64,000 nt of DNA from Amoeboaphelidium protococcarum X5 (GCA_023515725.1 JALDTO010000266.1:1695608-1759607); one strand, 5' to 3'; counted from the stretch's first letter, positions 5,885 to 64,000 are shown. Numbers and translations are program-made. Notes: a model not told the origin generated them from the sequence alone.

Positions 5885-6137
5885 TATACTAATAGATATG
5901 TTTTTATTCGCGCAGACCTTCGTAGATTAATAAGCTGATACAAAATATTATTTTCAATCTAACACTATGATTTTTTTAAGTATGGGGTCCAACCAAACTC
6001 TACGCGGTATTTTAATTGATCAGCAACAAAAAGAGAAAAGATGTGCGAGCGAGTTCTTTCTCTCATTGCAACCTGTCGTGGCAACGGAGACAAAGACGAA
6101 CATCGCCACACGTATTATCATCTACAAAAAAATAACA

Positions 6138-7330
6138 ATGTAAAGTTTGTAGATATAGTATCGAGATAATTATTAATGCTCAATGTATTTATTTTCACAT
6201 TGTCAAGTTTCAGCAACTGATTGTTAATATTCACACGCTCTTCAGCATGATGATTAGCATCAAGTCACTCCAATTCTGTCATACGGATGCTTGAATTCAA
6301 AACATTCTCTTCCTCCTAATCAAGCTACTGTACTTCTGCAGGTCTAAATCTACGACATCTAAGGATTCTTAAGCACTAGCATCACAATTAACGGATCCGG
6401 GCTAATGCTGAAGCTAATCGTCACGCTAAAACATAGTGCAAGGACCAGCATTATCACCATGATCGATAAACTGTGGCAATGCACTGTCACCACCTTCGCG
6501 ATTAAAACTTCATTTAGCAAGCTGTACAGGTTAAGAAGTTTATAAAGCTTAAACCCAGGAGCATTAGTCTCTCGCGATGGTGGACATTTGCCAGAATATT
6601 AGAGCATCGCTTCTCTAATATCACCTTGTTCACGCAGCCGACTACCGGGTCGAAGTCTGCGAGGCTAAACGAACGAACGAACGACGACGGCGATTCAGTG
6701 GGTTTCCTTTCATGCCCACCACAACTTGGTGCAGAGTGAGTGATACTATAGCACTTGCAACAGGCGAGCGCGAAATCATAATATCAGACAGACAGCATGC
6801 ATCCCTTCTTCTCATTAAATAAGTATGAATCGCTTACTACTACCACTCTATCGGTACAGTGCCGACATGGCATCACTATGATTCGATTCAGACAGAAGAG
6901 GATTCAAACGGAACAATTGATACATGTTATAGCGCCCTTAAGGCATTGGTAGAGATACAGCACTGACTGAGCATACGCAATGTGTGGCAGGATGTTCCGG
7001 ATTCTTACAGACTGAGCATAGATGAAGTTGAAGGCACGGAGCGTACAGTTAGAGACATCTGGGAATTAATCGCAGTCTTGGTAGTTCAACTGATGCGAAT
7101 CATGCACACGAGGACATCTTTCTGTATTGTTACACTCTGAACACAAGCCCAACACACTGTGCTCCAGGGAAGGTTTACTGTGCATTGAGTTAGTGAGTGA
7201 GCGGCTTGGGTTGATCGCGCATGATCATCCTCGAACTTACCAACAATCTCAATGGGTGGCGTTTTAGAGTTTAGGCACAACGACATCATTGTTGGACCTC
7301 GAAGTCCTGACGAAAAGTAATTAACAACAT
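6138..7330 (+). pseudogene. Probable decayed gene beginning with a CCCH zinc finger
   Basis: ATG 6138 gives C-x7-C-x6-C-x3-H (CSMYLFSHCQVSATDCQYSH). Downstream coding-like segments switch frames and contain TGA. Confidence 0.25.
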
Positions 7331-7377
7331 CGCGACTTAAAGAGTAATTAAATCTATATATAAATAATGATACCATT

Positions 7378-8832
7378 TCAACAACTTTCACAATCTGAAG
7401 ACAGCAGGTAATGTGTCTAGAAGTGATCGTGAGCAGACTCTTCTCGACTAAGCGCATCAGCCGCGATACCAGCAGGAAAATCATCATCACTATTATTACA
7501 AGAATTATTCTCTTGCTCATCTGAGCTTGTCGCTGGTTCAATAAATTCAGCCAACTCTTGCACTCTCACCTCTTGATATAAAAAAGTTCCATCTTCTGCC
7601 TCACCACACTTGAAACGTGGGGTGATTAGCTCTACAATCTAGAAATCTTCGTGCTCATCTTCACTGCATTCACCAGTATAACCATCCAAATCGTCCTCTT
7701 AATTATTTCGACGCGTTCTTTTAGTTGGCTTTACCTTATCAATGCTATCCGGAATGGCCTTTAAAGATCGCTTCCTCGAAGATTTCAAAATCTATGACTA
7801 CTTCAGCGGAGTTTGAGGGACATTTGCAGCAACATCCTTTGGGATACGCGACATCTATACTTTCAACCTCTCAGATGGCTTTCTTAATAAGCAGATAATG
7901 AGCGCCTTCACCAATCGCTCACCGATAGGCTCTGATGCATTAGCGCCATCCTCCTCTGTAAATGGATACGTAAATACTTCATTCCGTGCATCATTTTCAA
8001 CAAAGATTTTAAAGCGTTCCGAGTTGAGTAAAAAAATTGGAGCATGCAGAGTGTACAAAGCGGCAAACACCTGAGCAGTCCTAGAATCTTGATACCAATG
8101 TTGATGGACAGGAAATGCAGTGCGACTTTTCAATTCTGTACCAAAAAAAGTCAACGAATCACAATTATAATCTTGGAAGCAAACGTCCATACAAGATTGA
8201 TAATCATACTCAGGCTTGGCCATGATGCCCCCTATACGAGTTTTTCGTTCTGCTGATGGAATTGCTGCAACTTAGAGAATTGAAGCTATCGCACCTACCA
8301 ACATTGACAAAGCATTATTAATATTAGCTTCAGAATCAGCCCTGCGTAGAACTGTCAGATGCAATTAGACCATTTAATTATCCTTGACCATTAACCAGCA
8401 ATCATTCCAGACCTAGCGAGAAACCTTGAGCATAGCTGCCAACATATCAAGCCCGTCATCCTGGCAGCCCAGCGGTTGAACATTTCTATACAGCGCTGGA
8501 TGAAATATAACATGCTTTAACTTGGATGCATGCGGATTAACAATTACAAGAGTCTATTACTCTTAGTCACGACGGTCCGCACACGAAACCACTTTAACAG
8601 AAGCTTTTTCAATAAAATCATGGAGCTTAATACAGTGAGACTAAATTAGATCTTTCATAGGAGTTTTTACATTCTGCTCCAAATTATCATCAGCATCATC
8701 TTCAACATAGTCAAGAATATCAACGGTTGATCCAGATCTAGAGGAATTTTCCTCAATGTAAGCACTTGGCACCACTCGAACTTCTAATGGCAATGACGCG
8801 TCAAGACTCTGATTGAATGTAGGCATAGACAT
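7378..8832 (-). CDS. Hypothetical 484-aa protein with possible PD-(D/E)xK nuclease-like core and acidic tail
   Basis: Uninterrupted table-6 ORF from ATG 8832 to TGA 7378-7380, joining track ORFs 8641-8832 and 7855-8223. Contains MDVCF..FFGTELKS (D...ExK) and WYQDSRTAQVFAALY. Confidence 0.75.
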
Positions 8833-9239
8833 GAGACGCGTTAATTACGTAATTAAAAATAAGCAGTAGTATAAAATGAAGAAATGTCTTGACGCAGTAG
8901 AAGATTTTGAGTTTATCACTGTAGTGGAATTAGTGAAACGGCAGTAAACAGGTTTCTGAAAGCGTCGTAAAAAAGAGCAATTGAAGACAACGTGATTTTG
9001 AAATTACGGCATACATGTTGTTGTGCTAAGACGCGTTTTTATTAAGTCTCAGCCCTGGGAGTAGGATGGATATTATAATATTATAAAATTCAGATTTTCA
9101 TTTCAGTCACATAGTATCAACGCGTGCATAAGGCGGTCAAAGTCAAGGTTTACTGATCTAAAGAGTGCAGTCATTAACTCGTGTGAAACAGTCAAAAGTG
9201 GTATTAGTAAAGACTGTGACAAGTATCGAACGTAGATAA

Positions 9240-9900
9240 TGCATGTAAACACCCCAATGAGGAAACCTGCCAAAACTTACAGAGATGTATGGTAATTCAA
9301 GTATACTCTACACACTAATATCCAAGTTTGTACCATAATAATCAGATTAAGTGTTAGTGTTTTGCTACAGCTATAAAGCCTTACCGAGAATAGCACACCA
9401 ACAAACTGATGCTTCCATAAAACATCACGCGAAGTATACTGCACACGAAACTAGTACGTGATATAGTGGATCGATTCTCATCTTTTAGATTTAATATGCC
9501 AACACTAAAGTTCATTTACAAGAGAGCAAACATAAGCCAGAATGCCATATACTGCGCATGACTGGAAGGCATTCCAAATCCATCGTGTCTCTTCATGGCT
9601 CCCATCGAAAGCGATGATGGAGGAGAACTATGGGAAGCAACATTCACAACCACAGCGAAAATATTCTCGTCAACCTGAAGAATCAGCGAATGGAAAGTCT
9701 GGACGTGGTGCTTGTATATGTGTTTACGCGCGTAGTTGACAACTTCATTCAAGATCAAGCCAATTAGTCATTGCAGCATGTTCATAGATGGTCGCACTGT
9801 CAGGCATGAGAACACGAGATGAAACATGTACCAGATGGGGAATAGCGAAGACACTCCCATGATTACAGAAATAGTAAATGTATCAGGAATTTACACTTGA
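9240..9900 (+). mobile_element. Degenerate Mutator-like (MULE) DDE transposase fragment
   Basis: Frame-broken segments LTEMYGNSSILYTL / HNNQIKCQCFA (cf. MULE DxNNQIxPLAFA) and TMGSNIHNHSENILVNLKNQRMESLD (cf. TSNxxESxNxxLKxxR). Several frameshifts and TGA. Confidence 0.4.
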
Positions 9901-56880: not shown

Positions 56881-57738
56881 TTTATGAGTGAATAAATGTG
56901 ACTTCGAACTAACATGTTGATTCTCTTCACGTTTATAATTACGAATTTTAATTTTTAATTTTTGTGAATTAATTTTAGGCTATCCATAGACTGTTATTCA
57001 CCGATTAATGGCTGTATTCTTTTAACGTCGCTTGATCGATGAAACATAGCGTCCGTATCGGTTACGATATCGGAATGAGAAGCAAACATTTAATTCATTA
57101 GTGTTGCATCAAATGCTTATGAGTGAACCGCTTAATGAAAAAAAAACTTATTAGAGTCGAACTTACGGCACTGAAGATCAATGGGTAGTGAGTGACACGG
57201 GAGCAAGCGACACAGCACTAGTAGAGACTATCAAAGTCGGTCGTTGATGCGAGAACAGGACAGAACGCGCGCGCGTATAAATTCGCAGTGACCGAACGCA
57301 TTCTTTCTTTTTTCAGTATCAGTAGATTGGAAGATAAAGTTTTTACTAACATTTAACTAGTGGTTCAGTAAACGTTCCCCTTCCATATATAGACGCGTAT
57401 TTCTCAATCTGAAGTCTAACTAGGTCTATTAGTTATTCTATGGCGAGAAATTCTATAATTACATCTTTACATTGTATTGTTATAACTCTTTAATATTTCC
57501 CATGATCATCAGGACTCATTATTATTGCTTTAAATTGAGGGTATTACGCGTTCACATTGTATCAATTGCTCCAATTTTCAGGCATATGCATCATGCTCTA
57601 TCTTGACGCGTCTGGCTGACAAGCGAGGTGGCTGTAATCCTTCAATAGGCAGTATTTCAATGAGGTGTATCTTACATTTTCGCAATTTTCAATTTGTACG
57701 CTTCCTTCATTTTAATAGTTCAATAGAAGCCTATATAG

Positions 57739-59505
57739 ATGCAAAAGCGTAAAAGACAAGACGAAACTAGCTCTGCTTCTTAGCAGACAGAAGCTGAAGT
57801 AGGAATCACTGAATATCTCGGTAGTTCTGCTGGTGAGAGATTCTCTGGCATTCTCAAGCAGAGATATGAAGACTTTATCGTCAATGAGATTGATTCTTTG
57901 GGTAATGTCGTAGTGCTGTCTGATGTATCCGCGTCACCGACAGATAGCGATGATATCTTACAAGACTAGTCTCAATTGGAGATTCCTAGCGATTTTATGC
58001 ATATTATATCAGATGATATTAAAGAACACCTGTTTGCAGTTTTAAATGGAAGTTTGAAGGATGTTTAGCTAGAGTCGTAGGAATTGGCAAAGGATCAGCG
58101 AACTCAGCTGCATCAGTGGATTAAAAAGGCATTTAATGGTAAATTGGAATCATAGACTAAGGATGGCGGCATTGTTGTCAAGAAATCCAATAGCAGGACG
58201 CGTCAAGATAGCTTCTATCTTCTATTCCGTCTTTGCAAATCTAATCGCGATACTCATGATGCTTTGCAAATTCTATCCAGAGCATTGAACATCCAACACA
58301 AGAGATTAGCTGTAGCTGGTACTAAAGATAAACGCGGTATCACTACTTAGCTCGTCACTGCATTTAACCTTAGTGAGAGACATTTGATGAGCGCCAATGT
58401 GTTCTTAAAACGCCATAACATTTAAGTTGGAAATCCTGTTCGCGTAAAGTAGCAGCTAACTCTGGGTGACTTGTCAGGTAATCAATTCAAGATCACGCTC
58501 CGTAATATATAATTCGGTGACACTTAATCTATTGATAGACGTTTACAAGAGCTCAATTAGACAGGATTTATCAACTATTTTGGAATGCAGCGATTTGGCC
58601 ACGGTAAATCTCCCACTCACCTTGTTGGAAAACTACTGCTACAGTTGAAGTATGGTGAAGTTGTGAATCTTTTGGTCAAGTCTGCACTTTCTAGCGACCA
58701 TCCGCAATATGATTCGGATGATGACTTGATCACTGCAGACACATCGCTGGAAGATTTGAATCGCTTGAGGGATTGTGTTAACCGAAGAGAAGTGTCCGCA
58801 TCTAAGATTCTGGAATTTCTGATAAAGAACTTTCAGTAGCAAAAAGTCAACTATCAAGGTGCCATACTCTCTATTCCTCGTACTCTCCGCATGATGTACT
58901 ATCACGCGTATTAAAGTTATCAGTGGAACCAGGGTGCGAGTTTCAGATTGAAAAACTATGGATCTAAAGTAGTTGAAGGTGATTTAGTCTTGATAGATGA
59001 TCAGAATAATAGTGGTCGTGGTGGAGATTCAGAGAGCAGATCTGCTAGTGTCAAGTATGTATCTGCTGAAGATTGTGGTAGTTATCACATCTCCCAAGTA
59101 GTTCTCCCTTGTTATGGTTCTCAATCTTAGTTACCCAAGAACGAAGTGGGAGTGTTTTTTTAGAATCTTATTGCCGCAGATGGATTTAACAGAGATTGTA
59201 TGGCGGATTTGTACAAGAAATTGGACTTGTACGGCGATTACAGAAAGATTATCGCTGGACTCAATGAACGTGGTGAAAGCACTTTAGATCTGGAATGGAA
59301 TGTTGTAAAGTACACCGATGCAACAGTACCTCTTGTGGATTCTGACATGGATACCCTTGAAAACAGGAGTAATGCTTCTAATGGTGTCGAGGATGGACAA
59401 TTGACAGCGCTGAATCTTAAGTTCAAACTTGGCCGCTCTGAATACGCGACAATGCTCCTACGTGAACTTATGACTGTCGAAAGTGACCGTCAGTAACAGT
59501 AATGA
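57739..59505 (+). CDS. PUS7: TruD-family pseudouridine synthase Pus7
   Basis: EVGITEY, GILKQRYEDFIVNE, AGTKDKRGITT(TAG=Q), GNQFKITLR, GFINYFGMQRFG, YHAY(TAA=Q)SYQWN, YATMLLRE. Confidence 0.97.
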
Positions 59506-60194
59506 ACATGAAGTAAAAAATGGTCATTTTGCACTAAACGTCGCATGAAAGGCTTAGCAAACGCGTCCGTCCACAACCGTTAAATATTATGTAAAGCATA
59601 TGACATTATTAATATATCTAACTCTATGTGGTACCTGTTTTTTACCATGTTTAATTATCTTTTAAAATACTTATGGGAATGATTAAAATTGATATTTCCT
59701 AATAAGAGCTTATAATTATATCGGATCATGAGTGTAGAATTCGGTAGTTGACAGTTAAAATGTGAAATGCATCAGTCTGTACTTGTCATCATTAGAGAAA
59801 ACTCTATAAGAAGTCTAACAAATATAATAGAACATCATATGCATTCAAGATTTATAAGTAGATGCCATACGGCGCCATTAGAAACGCGATATGGTCTGAT
59901 AATATACTGAATAAAGTAAAACATCGCAAACAATATATCCATTGTGGGTATATGCACAAAGAGGTGAGAGGAGCCACCGATATGCGACCTTTGCAAGGGA
60001 TTTAGTTACTTTAGGCTACAATATGACCCATGCGTACACAATACCAGTATACATGGGCTTCGATAGAGCCATTTAATACGCGATCAAATAAGGAACAATA
60101 GCGCGTCCGGCTACTGATTTGATCTATTACAGTCCTTCATCAAGACAGAATTGAAAGAAAAAGAGAAGAAACGCGAGAGAGAATCTTTTCTACC

Positions 60195-60197
<3 letters not shown>

Positions 60198-60229
<32 letters not shown>
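60198..60229. repeat. (GA)n microsatellite upstream of the kinase fusion gene
   Basis: Directly visible. Confidence 0.9.
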
Positions 60230-60231
<2 letters not shown>

Positions 60232-60427: not shown

Positions 60428-63400
60428 ATGGGAAATGTGAACTGTGCAGAAACTCCAGACCTTTAGGTGCATTGTACTGATGAAGGTGAGTCTCATTTAA
60501 CTGCAAAGCCTTCGATCAGTTATCTGTCGCGATTGTGTGTAGTTACTCTGCATGACATCCAATGCCGCCGTGCTAATCAATCTGAATACAAAAAGGCCAA
60601 GAATTAGGAAATATACTACAAGTTTATAATTGCATTCAACTTCTCTGTAAATTCTCCAGAGATTGAGACTATTAAGGCTGTATATACAAGGGATCAGATA
60701 TTTGACAGCGTAAAATTGCACAAGGCTTTTCCTATGGTTCATTCTAGCGATCTGTCATCTGGCTTTATGGAGGATATTGGCACTGTGTGCCAGGAGAATG
60801 CAACGTGCACCCATTAATTTGAAATGATGCTCCCTGCTTCTCTGACGGACCGAATGATGTTTGGTTTCCTGCTTGATGAGAATAACGTCGTGACAGCTAA
60901 AGTGCGTGGCGCTGTCCTGGTGGAAGGTGAATTGGAATTACTTCACTCTATACCCGCCGTTGTGGATAGTGAGAGAGTGTCTAGACGAATTGGTATTGAG
61001 CGGATGTCTCGTATGAATGTTAGTGCCTAGTTTGATATTCCGCAATCTATGCGATTGTAGAATGCCATGAAGAAGTTTCAGGCTGTATCAAAGCCTAAAT
61101 CTGAGTTTATTGCCAGTACTGATGGTGTTAAGTTATCCTACAGATAGTATTAAAGTGATGGTTTAGATGATCAAAAGGCTATACTAGTCATGATTGCAGC
61201 TAATGGTTAACATTATGATTATATTGCAAGTGAAGTCAGCAAAAGTTATAACATTATTTCATTTGTTTTGGAATTAAGAGGCTTTGGTCAATCTGGTGGA
61301 TTGAAAGGATATTCTCCTACCAAAGATCAAGTATTTGTGGATATCAAAGTCTTCATTTAGTATTTAAAGGTCAACTTTGACGGTCTCCCTGTATTCTTGT
61401 GTGGACATTACTTCTAAGGTGGTCTTGTGCTTAATTATCTCGGCTGGAGGTAGAGGGAGCCAGTTGATGCAGCCATATTTATCTCACCTCACTTTGGTTA
61501 TATGGCTGGCGATAGTATCAATTTCAAGAGCCTGGACAGTTTAAAGTCATCACGAAGGTCCAGTATGAATTAGAACTCTTCAACTGTGTCTTCGTTCAAT
61601 AACTTATTGCAACGGTATTCATCACAGGATGAGATTATACACCACGATGATGCAAGAGTTGAAAGCACTTTTATGGATTTGGCGTCATCTAATATTGCCA
61701 AAGCCTGTAACGCTGTAAATCCTAAAAAGTTGTTTGAAAAGATTGATACCCAGTTTGGCTTCTGGGTTGGTGAATGTGAAGAAATCGTAGTGCCTGACAA
61801 GATTGTTAATTTCCCCAAGAGATCTTCCGTTCGCTCCACCGTGAACATTATCCCTAAAGCATCACACATTGACGTGATTTTGCAGATATCCACCACGTTG
61901 GGAGAGTGGATAGAGGCTACTGCATCTAGAGATGTGCCCACTAGGAAGTTGTAGGCTGGAGAGAAGAGTCCACGGGATGATGAGAGTGGTCCAGCACCAT
62001 TTAAGCATCCCGTGCTGTTCGATTATGATCTGGTCACGCGAACTTATAATGATCTGAAGCTTGATTGTGGCAAGAGTTCATTCTTAGTGGCCAATGATGG
62101 ATTTAATATTCGGTATCGCGTATTTATGCCATAACAATCTGATGATCGAGTGTAAGCTAACGTGATTCTATTTCAAATGGATTTCAAGCTTATTCTCCCT
62201 TGGCTCCTATCATGTAAACTGCCAGTAGCTGTGTACGCCGTGGAACTTCGAGGGATTGATAATTCATCTATAGTTCATAGCACAGATGTGATTTTGGGCG
62301 ATATTCGGCTGTTTGTGTGTCACCTGAAATTTAATAATCCTGACATTCCACTGCTTATTGGTGGTCACGGCTTTGGTGCATCTGCCTGTATTAACTATTC
62401 GAACTGGCGATATAGAGAACCTGTGAATGGCTATCTTTTCATCTCCCCGCTGATTGATTATCTATCACTCAATACTGCAGATTCTGGAATGGTGAAAACT
62501 CACAATATGATCAAGCTGTACACGGTCGATGAGTAGAAGCACTGGTTTAACACTATGAGAAGTTCAGCTTCTGTTAAGTTACTCACCACATTCAATAGCG
62601 CCTTAAATTCTGCTGCTGCATCCACTTAGAATTCTAATACTAATAGTCCGCTCGGTTCATTGTGTCAAATCTCTGACAGCTCATCCATCACCATCTCCTA
62701 GCCGTTGTGGGGTGCGTTAACTTGTAAAAATGTCTAGTCACTCTTTGGTAATATGGAAGTCCCGTTCGGTCTGTACCTTGGCTCAGAAGATGAGCTTACG
62801 TGTGCCCATTAATTTGTCAGTATGGTGGAGTAGCAGACTGATAAAGTGTACCTCAAAGATTTGCAGGTGATGAGAGGATCAAGTCATATGTCGTCACTGA
62901 TCACGGCTTCTGCGCACATTGTTCCATTCATTAAAAAGTTTATCAAGATTGTGTCTCCTAAGCTGTCATTTAAGATGAGGAATCCCAAGCTATCGTAATT
63001 TGAAAAAGTCTAATTCATCGGCAGAGGGTCTTTCGGTAAGGTGTATTTGGTGCGGCACATCGAGTCTGATCGCTACTATGCCATGAAAGTCTTGAGTAAG
63101 AGTCAGATATTTAAACTCAACGAGGTGAAGCATGTCATTACTGAGCGTAATATACTCTCAGACTTGAATTCACAGTACGTGGTGTCTTTTGTCGGCTCGA
63201 TGCAAGATGGGCATAATCTGTACATTTTAATGGAGTATGTGATTGGAGGTGAATTGTTCACTCAGTTGACTCTTCGCAAATGCTTCAATGTGGATACTGC
63301 GCGATTTTATGCTGCGGAAGTTGTCTTATTTCTGGAACATATGCACAGTAACTAGATTATTTATCGTGATATTAAACCAGAGAATATTCTGATTGATGCT

Positions 63401-64000
63401 ATGGGACATATAAAGTTTACAGATTTTGGATTTGCCAAGTATTTGCGCAAACGGACGTTCACCTTTTGTGGCACTCCGCAGTATATGGCTCCTGAGATTA
63501 TCATAAATGCTGAACTGGGCAGGAGAGGACTTGGATATTCATTCGCTGTCGATTTCTACTCTCTCGGTATCCTGATATTTGAGATGCTCGTTGGTTAGAC
63601 TCCATTTCATGACCTCAATGTGAAAGATGTGTATAGAAAGATCCTGTACGGACAAGTTGAATTCCCGTGGTCGATGGATCCTGATGCCAAAGATTTGATT
63701 AGACTTCTATTAACAAAGAATCCTAGCAAACGGCTCGGTGTCAATGGCATTGAAGAGATCAAAAATCATAAATGGTTCTAGTCTATAAACTGGGAATAGC
63801 TTAGACGGCGAGAAATTGCTCCGCCCTTCATTCCAAGATTCACACATGCTGCTGATACTAGAAATTTCATACCATGGAAAAGTGGACAAAAGAATGTACG
63901 CGGCGATGAATATGATCAAGCAGGCTTGGACACCGCATGTAACCGCGATTAGGAAGATAGTAAGAAAGTGGCAGATGACGTTGGCCAATCTAGAGAAAAT
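60428..64000 (+). CDS. Fusion protein: N-terminal unknown domain + two Ser-less alpha/beta-hydrolase (Hydrolase_4/MAG-lipase-like) domains + PKA-like AGC kinase; 3'-truncated by window edge
   Basis: One TGA-free frame from ATG 60428 (MGNVNC) to the window end, linking track ORFs 60824, 61586, 62162, 63041 and 63401. Hydrolase 1 about 61100-61915 ([32 protein letters not shown]). Hydrolase 2 about 62080-62935 ([30 protein letters not shown]). Kinase [57 protein letters not shown]. Confidence 0.92.

What the first reader, a model, noticed from the sequence alone, without database searches (positions are those of the whole stretch)
60428..64000. Tandem pseudo-lipase domains fused to a PKA-like kinase: candidate lipid-sensing kinase
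Seen: once TAR is read as Gln, a single frame of more than 1190 codons carries MGNVNC (Gly2 plus a nearby Cys, a myristoylation/palmitoylation-like signal), about 220 aa of unknown domain, two complete Hydrolase_4-type alpha/beta-hydrolase domains and an intact PKA-type kinase with AGC tail. In both hydrolase domains the GxSxG nucleophile is replaced, and by different residues: GH-Y-FQGG (61403-61423) and GH-G-FGA (62363-62380). The N-terminal HG oxyanion motif is also lost. The acid region (GECEE, GSEDE) and the C-terminal His (ASH, SSH) persist. Established: alpha/beta-hydrolase folds are reused as ligand receptors and signalling scaffolds (GID1, D14/KAI2, EDS1, neuroligin), and canonical PKA-C is regulated in trans by cAMP-binding R subunits. 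Inference: this resembles PKG logic (two tandem sensor domains in cis ahead of an AGC kinase) with lipid-binding pseudo-hydrolases in place of cyclic-nucleotide domains. It could be a membrane-tethered receptor kinase for monoacylglycerol or lysolipids, perhaps of host origin. I know of no described protein with this architecture, and standard-code annotation would miss it.
Basis: partly seen in the sequence, partly recalled or inferred. Interest (0 to 1): 0.92.

Follow-up and report, generated by a model that had tools for sequence, protein, structure and literature searches.

The report
Ancient kinase carrying two dead lipases
This algal parasite, several related microbes and a distant single-celled relative of animals share an apparently undescribed signalling enzyme, in which an intact PKA-like kinase is joined to two inactivated fat-splitting domains and a membrane anchor that probably control it; what switches it on is not known.

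Summary
The fusion is real. The mature protein has 1182 aa, and NCBI already lists it as hypothetical. From the N-terminus it carries a Gly2 myristoylation signal, an Ig-like sandwich, a basic linker, two lipase-fold domains and an intact PKA-like kinase ending in FxxF. It is under strong purifying selection (dN/dS 0.02-0.09). At least 15 full-length relatives exist, in aphelids, unidentified compact-genome eukaryotes and the ichthyosporean Chromosphaera. Their kinases form one clade beside canonical PKA, which this genome also has, with an R subunit. 29 of 30 hydrolase domains lack the catalytic Ser. The nearest intact relatives are prokaryotic hydrolases. Monoacylglycerol sensing is not supported: the oxyanion loop and lid are the most eroded parts. 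New lead: a conserved R-x-x-R-x-x-small-hydrophobic segment lies ahead of the hydrolases and resembles PKG's pseudosubstrate. Best reading: a membrane-anchored kinase that inhibits itself in cis and is probably cAMP-independent; the activator is unknown. I found no paper on it. The scan already noted the homeologous copy (s1-570538).

The parts
60428..60485 (+). Exon 1: start codon, Gly2 N-myristoylation signal, first strand of the Ig-like domain
   Evidence: Gly2 in 10 of 15 full-length relatives, Ser/Thr at position 6 in 8 of those 10
60486..60542 (+). 57-nt GT..AG intron, phase 1, length a multiple of three (61 nt in the homeolog)
60543..64000 (+). Exon 2: uninterrupted table-6 frame, continuing to a TGA 33 bases past the window end; protein ends FDQF
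60464..60913 (+). Ig-like beta-sandwich, residues 13-143 (spans the intron); no Pfam match; weak fold matches to NPC2, PDE-delta, ApaG, RhoGDI, UNC119 and generic Ig domains
   Evidence: (pLDDT 88.5)
60971..60997 (+). Conserved E-R-x-x-R-x-x-small-hydrophobic segment (residues 163-171), candidate pseudosubstrate
   Evidence: post hoc motif, predicted helical at low confidence
61100..61930 (+). Pseudo-hydrolase domain 1 (residues 206-482): Ser->Tyr at 61409-61411, HG motif lost, Glu and His kept; cap replaced by a Ser-rich low-confidence stretch (61550-61678)
   Evidence: (E 6e-56 to a profile of intact prokaryotic relatives)
62072..62953 (+). Pseudo-hydrolase domain 2 (residues 530-823): Ser->Gly at 62369-62371, oxyanion loop shortened, Asp and His kept; Ser/Asn-rich low-confidence stretch (62525-62689)
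62999..63781 (+). Intact PKA-like AGC kinase domain (residues 839-1099): equivalents of PKA K72, E91, D166, K168, N171, D184, T197, E127, E170, E230 and Y247 present; E203->Gln; 7-residue insert after APE
63782..64000 (+). AGC C-terminal tail (PPFIP, DTRNF), ending FxxF just outside the window

Best explanation
This is one member of an old, undescribed family of single-chain PKA-related kinases. Shown: one spliced gene; an intact basophilic kinase; two alpha/beta-hydrolase folds that have lost the catalytic Ser and oxyanion loop but stay under purifying selection; an N-terminal Ig-like domain; conserved Gly2. Inferred: the myristoylated N-terminus holds the protein at a membrane. The basic linker segment (residues 163-171) lies in the kinase's substrate cleft as a pseudosubstrate. 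The two dead hydrolase folds act as a regulatory clamp in cis, as the CNB domains do in PKG. Binding of a membrane surface, a lipid-modified partner or a protein releases the inhibition. This would give a PKA-like output that does not depend on cAMP, alongside the canonical PKA-C/PKA-R system that the genome also encodes. The dead domains work mainly as folded interaction modules, not as a conserved pocket for monoacylglycerol.
For: The architecture is kept in at least 15 full-length proteins from aphelids to Chromosphaera. dN/dS is 0.022 and 0.042 in the two dead domains, against 0.035 in the kinase. Catalytic kinase residues and the E127/E170/E230 equivalents are invariant. The family's kinases are one clade (99/95), sister to this genome's PKA pair. 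Canonical PKA-C and PKA-R exist separately. In the linker, Arg is at P-6 and at P-3 in 15 of 17 fused members, a hydrophobic residue at P+1 in 14 of 17, and a small residue at P0 in 9 of 17. Chance is 0.1-0.6 full matches per protein anywhere. The segment is not seen in kinase-free relatives. PKG autoinhibitory motifs are RAQGIS, KRQAIS and AKAGVS and sit N-terminal to the tandem domains (PMC9417419). Erosion is concentrated in the oxyanion loop and cap while the core is kept.
Against: The motif was defined after seeing the alignment. P0 is His, Arg, Gln, Asp or Val in 8 of 17 members. AlphaFold predicts the segment as part of a long helix at pLDDT under 50, and a helix gives the same i, i+3, i+7 pattern. 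I could not inspect the model for docking, and the domain arrangement is uncertain (pTM 0.52). The alignment to kinase-free relatives is unreliable in this region. Five members lack Gly2, though their starts may be miscalled. No experiment exists.
Confidence: 0.45

Rival explanations
1. Small-lipid receptor kinase: one or both dead hydrolase pockets bind monoacylglycerol, lysolipid or a similar molecule, as GID1 or D14 bind hormones, and this switches the kinase on.
For: The closest solved relatives are monoglyceride lipases (E 5e-13). Aphelids keep His and acid in both domains, an invariant His-Tyr-x-Gln elbow in domain 1, and Ser->Gly in domain 2, which leaves room for a ligand. Most non-aphelid members keep the domain-1 cap. 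The Ig domain's best Foldseek hits are lipid carriers.
Against: No pocket residue is conserved across the family. The nucleophile position holds Tyr, Gly, Leu, Phe, Thr, Ala, Ile, Val, Met or Asp. The oxyanion loop and cap are the least conserved parts, and both caps are low-complexity in this protein. The family also occurs in a non-parasite.
Confidence: 0.2
2. Targeted PKA paralogue: the kinase is constitutive or is held by the ordinary PKA-R subunit and cAMP. The N-terminal 830 residues only localise it or recruit substrates, like a built-in AKAP.
For: The kinase is closest to PKA-C (299 bits, against under 250 for Akt2, RSK2 and PKG). It keeps T197, Y247 and the FxxF end. A PKA-R with two CNB domains is in the genome.
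Against: W196->Phe, E203->Gln and a 7-residue insert after APE alter the surface that, by my recollection of PKA holoenzyme structures, binds R subunits. The basic linker motif is kept in fused members and is not seen in kinase-free ones.
Confidence: 0.22
3. The hydrolase folds still do chemistry without the Ser, using the His-acid pair as a general base, as some alpha/beta-fold lyases and dioxygenases do (from my own knowledge). The protein would be a bifunctional enzyme-kinase.
For: His and acid are kept in both domains in five aphelid-type proteins. One fused member (P0009, domain 2) and the kinase-free Capsaspora protein keep Ser, Asp and His.
Against: The His is lost from domain 1 in 8 of the 10 non-aphelid members, and from most of their second domains. 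The oxyanion motif is lost everywhere.
Confidence: 0.08
4. Artefact: neighbouring genes joined by reading through TAR codons, or a decaying pseudogene.
For: No single contig of any run spans the whole gene.
Against: The same fusion is one open frame in standard-code genomes and in a Paraphelidium transcriptome model (P0002). Selection is strongly purifying. Coverage in run X5, which shows the spliced form, is continuous with no joints.
Confidence: 0.02

Closest known systems
PKA catalytic subunit / PRKX-type kinases
   Same: Best sequence match of the kinase in all three members tested. Sister clade to this genome's PKA pair when rooted on Ypk, Sch9, PKC, Akt and SGK. FxxF C-terminus, activation-loop Thr/Ser, acidic basophilic-site residues and N-terminal Gly2.
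   Different: About 830 extra N-terminal residues in three folded domains. A separate clade from canonical PKA-C, which the genome also has. Phe in place of the Leu after the activation Thr. E203 is replaced in all but one member. Insert after APE in aphelids.
cGMP-dependent protein kinase (PKG)
   Same: Layout of N-terminal targeting module, candidate pseudosubstrate, two tandem domains and AGC kinase in one chain. PKG is the top VIA-align match for the kinase fold (Z 40.7).
   Different: No CNB domain and no leucine zipper. The kinase sequence is closer to PKA (259 vs 230 bits, 265 vs 241 bits). The tandem domains are hydrolase folds. Autoinhibition is untested.
Monoacylglycerol lipase / Hydrolase_4 (PF12146), nearest: an unnamed ~320-aa prokaryotic subfamily with FxHGGGA and GHSSG motifs
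   Same: Same fold and order of motifs. A profile of the intact subfamily hits domain 1 at E 6e-56 and domain 2 at 3e-28. One intact member lies in a Neomarinimicrobiota MAG, and others lie among bacterial-type genes.
   Different: Nucleophile Ser and HG oxyanion motif lost; caps eroded; duplicated and fused to a kinase. Not the closest kin of this genome's own lipases.
Repurposed alpha/beta-hydrolase folds (GID1, D14/KAI2, EDS1, neuroligin; from my own knowledge)
   Same: A hydrolase fold reused for signalling. Ser->Gly in domain 2 parallels neuroligin.
   Different: Different hydrolase subfamily; tandem; fused in cis to a kinase; no conserved pocket signature or known ligand.
PDE-delta / UNC119 / RhoGDI / NPC2 lipid-binding Ig-like sandwiches
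   Same: Size and all-beta fold. They fill most of the top Foldseek rows (E 3e-4 to 3e-3, TM about 0.5).
   Different: No sequence match. VIA-align ranks generic GH2 Ig domains higher (Z 9.3, against 7.2 for RhoGDI and 7.7 for NPC2). No cavity was shown.

Membership tests
AGC kinase, PKA-related | Intact catalytic motifs and AGC C-tail with terminal FxxF | tested here: met
Canonical PKA catalytic subunit | Groups with canonical PKA-C | tested here: not met
   Own clade, 99/95; aphelid members plus PKA rejected, p-AU 0.029; only two PKA rows, from one genome, were in the tree
Canonical PKA catalytic subunit | Stand-alone domain of about 350 aa with only a flexible N-terminal extension | tested here: not met
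   Three folded domains precede it
Canonical PKA catalytic subunit | Inhibited by R subunit, released by cAMP | not testable with these tools
   An R subunit exists in the genome; the docking surface is partly changed
PKG | Two cyclic-nucleotide-binding domains in cis | tested here: not met
   No cNMP_binding match at this locus
PKG | Pseudosubstrate N-terminal to the tandem domains | tested here: inconclusive
   Motif of the right spacing at a conserved column in 9 of 17; post hoc; predicted helical at low confidence
Hydrolase_4 / monoacylglycerol lipase fold | Alpha/beta-hydrolase fold homologous to MGL | tested here: met
Active serine hydrolase | GxSxG nucleophile, HG oxyanion motif, Asp/His | tested here: not met
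   Tyr and Gly replace Ser; HG lost; acid and His kept in this protein
Ligand-receptor pseudo-hydrolase (GID1/D14 kind) | Conserved, intact ligand pocket and lid | tested here: inconclusive
PDE-delta/UNC119/RhoGDI/ML lipid-binding domains | Sequence or clear structural membership | tested here: inconclusive
   No Pfam or PDB sequence hit; fold matches at the level of generic Ig domains
N-myristoylated protein | Gly2 with a small residue at position 6, conserved | tested here: met
   Sequence signal only: Gly2 in 10 of 15, Ser/Thr6 in 8 of 10; the modification itself is untested

The most novel reading that the evidence does not exclude
The last common ancestor of animals and fungi had a third branch of PKA/PKG-type kinases. 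In this branch a prokaryote-related lipase fold, duplicated and inactivated, serves as a ligand-gated regulatory module in cis. It releases a PKG-like pseudosubstrate when it binds a lipid messenger or lipid-modified partner. This would be a one-component, non-nucleotide second-messenger kinase, kept in aphelids, other early fungal relatives and ichthyosporeans, and apparently missing from the well-studied animals and fungi.
Probability: 0.2. Interest if true: 0.85.

Novelty: new variant of a known kind. Interest (0 to 1): 0.64.

Why it matters
It adds an apparently undescribed regulatory architecture to the well-studied PKA/PKG kinase group. It occurs on both the fungal and animal sides of the opisthokont tree, so it is probably ancient. 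If the N-terminal region proves autoinhibitory, it shows PKG-like control in cis built from different parts, and it gives a testable route to a new signalling input. It is single-copy per subgenome and strongly conserved in a parasite that damages algal cultures, so its role in the infection cycle is worth testing.

Tried and rejected
1. Treating the frame as unspliced was rejected once the intron was found. 2. A RhoGDI/PDE-delta identity for the N-terminal domain was my lead from memory. Fold searches gave only weak, non-specific support, the A5 profile did not hit this genome's RhoGDI loci, and one direct comparison failed on a stop codon. 3. A PKG origin of the kinase is not supported by sequence scores; no PKG sequence could be put in the tree. 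4. Homology between the Ig domain and the N-termini of the kinase-free holozoan proteins is not established (hhalign probability 0.6%). Even the Chromosphaera N-termini match only weakly. 5. An early note that all domains lack Ser was wrong: P0009 domain 2 keeps it. Two of three word-indexed protein searches returned only the query or its near-identical sibling, so the family list is a lower bound and absence from animals, Dikarya or chytrids is NOT shown. 7. The organisms behind the Logan/ENA/MAG members could not be named. 8. No RR-x-S/A motif is shared at one position across the family. 9. Ten paper searches found no description; the main aphelid genome paper was not held. 10. Direction of transfer between prokaryotes and eukaryotes cannot be read from the domain tree (weak support, long branches). 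I searched stop-free pieces by reference first, then used the database's own protein record (P0085) that a tool returned.

Full report
Observation. Translated with TAR as Gln, the frame from 60428 has no stop to the window end and closes 33 bases further on with FDQF-TGA. The genome is 23.6 Mb and holds a second copy of the gene at 93% identity. Proteins in the same 90% cluster are named Amoeboaphelidium protococcarum hypothetical proteins, a species described as having genome-wide duplications (PMC10608142). TAR=Gln is supported by TAR/CAR interchange between the copies and by Gln enrichment opposite TAR codons in relatives.

One correction matters. Positions 60486-60542 are an intron. It has GT..AG ends. 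The homeolog's version is 4 nt longer and breaks the frame. Run X5 has no depth inside it and carries the end of exon 1 as a loose end at its 3' edge. X5 is not on record as RNA; I infer it is, from this spliced form. X5 covers the rest of the frame evenly and shows no joints, though no single contig spans the gene. The two exons match NCBI's 1182-aa protein P0085 exactly. I searched stop-free pieces by reference and then used that database record.

Anatomy. The AlphaFold model (mean pLDDT 75.5, pTM 0.52) shows a beta-sandwich at residues 13-143, a long low-confidence helix at 156-200, two alpha/beta-hydrolase domains (206-482, 530-823) and a kinase (839-1107). Folded alone, the sandwich is confident (pLDDT 88.5). 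Foldseek ranks NPC2, PDE-delta, ApaG, RhoGDI and UNC119 first, but weakly. VIA-align and the Atlas rank generic Ig domains first. So it is Ig-like, and lipid binding is only a hint. Between the two homeologs dN/dS is 0.089 for the N-terminal part, 0.022 and 0.042 for the hydrolase domains and 0.035 for the kinase. The dead domains are as constrained as the kinase.

Family. A search with one 126-residue piece found many proteins of 1100-1400 aa with two matches each. Those examined have Hydrolase_4 plus Pkinase. Named members come from Paraphelidium tribonemae, Amoeboaphelidium occidentale and, twice, the ichthyosporean Chromosphaera perkinsii. Others lie in gene-dense, intron-poor eukaryotic contigs that use the standard code, and several share neighbours. 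I could not name those organisms; the kinase tree groups them with aphelids (95/91), so early fungal relatives are my inference. Kinase-free relatives with one such hydrolase domain occur in Capsaspora, Pigoraptor and Chromosphaera. The 17 family kinases form one group apart from this genome's canonical PKA-C and second PKA-like kinase (99/95). They are sister to that pair when the tree is rooted on other AGC kinases. A separate origin of the Chromosphaera kinases is not rejected (p-AU 0.07), so one origin before the animal-fungal split is the simplest reading, not a proven one. The genome also encodes an ordinary PKA-R.

Hydrolase domains. The closest solved relatives are monoglyceride lipases. 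The closest relatives overall are stand-alone proteins of about 320 aa with intact FxHGGGA, GHSSG, Asp and His; the three I located are in prokaryotic contigs. Of 30 domains in 15 fusion proteins, 29 lack the Ser. The exception (P0009 domain 2) and the kinase-free Capsaspora protein keep Ser, Asp and His but not the HG motif. His and acid are retained in aphelids and often lost elsewhere. Measured against the intact subfamily, the elbow and following helix keep 51-70% of conserved positions, the oxyanion loop 4-18% and the cap 5-28%. In this protein both caps are Ser-rich, low-confidence stretches. A receptor for one lipid should conserve its pocket, and this family conserves the scaffold instead. 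Aphelids do keep a His-Tyr-x-Gln elbow in domain 1, and most other members keep the domain-1 cap.

Kinase and linker. Catalytic residues and the acidic residues that select basic substrates are invariant, and the activation-loop Thr/Ser is present in all but one member. Sequence scores favour PKA-C over PKG in three members. Between the Ig domain and hydrolase 1 lies one of the most conserved non-core segments, E-R-x-x-R. In register, 15 of 17 fused members have Arg at P-6 and at P-3, 14 have a hydrophobic P+1, and 9 have Gly, Ser, Thr, Ala or Cys at P0. Here it reads R-R-I-G-I, like the PKG autoinhibitory motifs RAQGIS and KRQAIS, which also sit ahead of two tandem domains (PMC9417419). It was not seen in the kinase-free relatives, where the alignment is poor. 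The motif is post hoc, P0 is bulky or acidic in eight members, and a helix would give similar spacing. It is a lead, not a result.

Mechanism. Most likely (0.45) this is a myristoylated, membrane-associated, PKA-like kinase that inhibits itself in cis through the basic linker. The two dead hydrolase folds would form a regulatory clamp released by a membrane, lipid-modified or protein partner. Rivals are a targeted PKA paralogue under ordinary R-subunit control or constitutively active (0.22), a small-lipid receptor (0.2), Ser-independent catalysis (0.08) and an artefact (0.02). The gene structure, domain content, loss of the nucleophile, selection and family range are shown. Everything about regulation is inferred.

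Comparison and novelty. It is an AGC kinase of the PKA neighbourhood. It fails membership of canonical PKA-C (separate clade, extra domains), PKG (no CNB) and active serine hydrolases. It may work like PKG. Ten literature searches found no description of the architecture, but the library lacks most subscription papers, including the main aphelid genome paper. I rate it a new variant of a known kind: single-chain AGC kinases with N-terminal regulatory domains are well known, but this domain set appears not to be. The scan had already flagged the homeologous copy (s1-570538) and part of this copy (s1-577579). Those are AI notes and are not independent support. Interest 0.64.

Noticed in passing
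P0033 / P0093 (Capsaspora), P0025, P0029, P0046 (Pigoraptor), P0076 (Chromosphaera): Kinase-free holozoan proteins with a long unassigned N-terminus and one hydrolase domain of the same subfamily. Capsaspora keeps Ser-Asp-His; the others have lost the Ser. They may be a sister family or the precursor of the fusion.
   Followed up: partly
L030:2149-5628 and 6001-9474: Two tandem full-length copies of the fusion gene in one contig. L029 and L030 share TIMELESS, EF-hand, CLASP and Memo neighbours; L031 and L032 share Iki1, methyltransferase and MSC neighbours.
   Followed up: partly
P0040, P0041, P0096 (L070-L073): An unnamed prokaryotic subfamily of about 320-aa alpha/beta-hydrolases with FxHGGGA and GHSSG motifs, some with signal-peptide-like N-termini. 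They are the closest active kin of the eukaryotic pseudo-domains; their substrate is unknown.
   Followed up: partly
L032:5094-8403 and L080:5437-9231: Family members that gene callers split into pieces, apparently at introns. Such pieces look like stand-alone hydrolases in protein databases (P0027, P0048).
   Followed up: partly
window 60165-60230: A GA-dinucleotide repeat about 200 bases upstream of the start, present in both homeologs. Run X5 has no coverage there, although the tool skips repeats at that place.
   Followed up: no
window 57664-59505 (+): The upstream table-6 frame of 614 codons looks like a TruD/PUS7 pseudouridine synthase by its C-terminal motif (from memory, not tested).
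   Followed up: no
L001:5595-6582 (-): A convergent gene ends about 60 bases after the kinase stop. One X5 contig runs across both 3' ends, which suggests overlapping 3' UTRs.
   Followed up: no
L014 (G000:C192): One of the genome's ordinary Hydrolase_4 genes has an odd elbow (S-D-S-S-A in place of G-x-S-x-G), while keeping Ser, Asp and His.
   Followed up: no
G000, whole genome: The cNMP-domain search found a PKA-R, a neuropathy-target-esterase-like protein and one other cNMP protein, each in two copies, but no PKG. The PDE-delta/UNC119 family search found nothing, but it rang in no control genome, so absence is not shown.
   Followed up: partly
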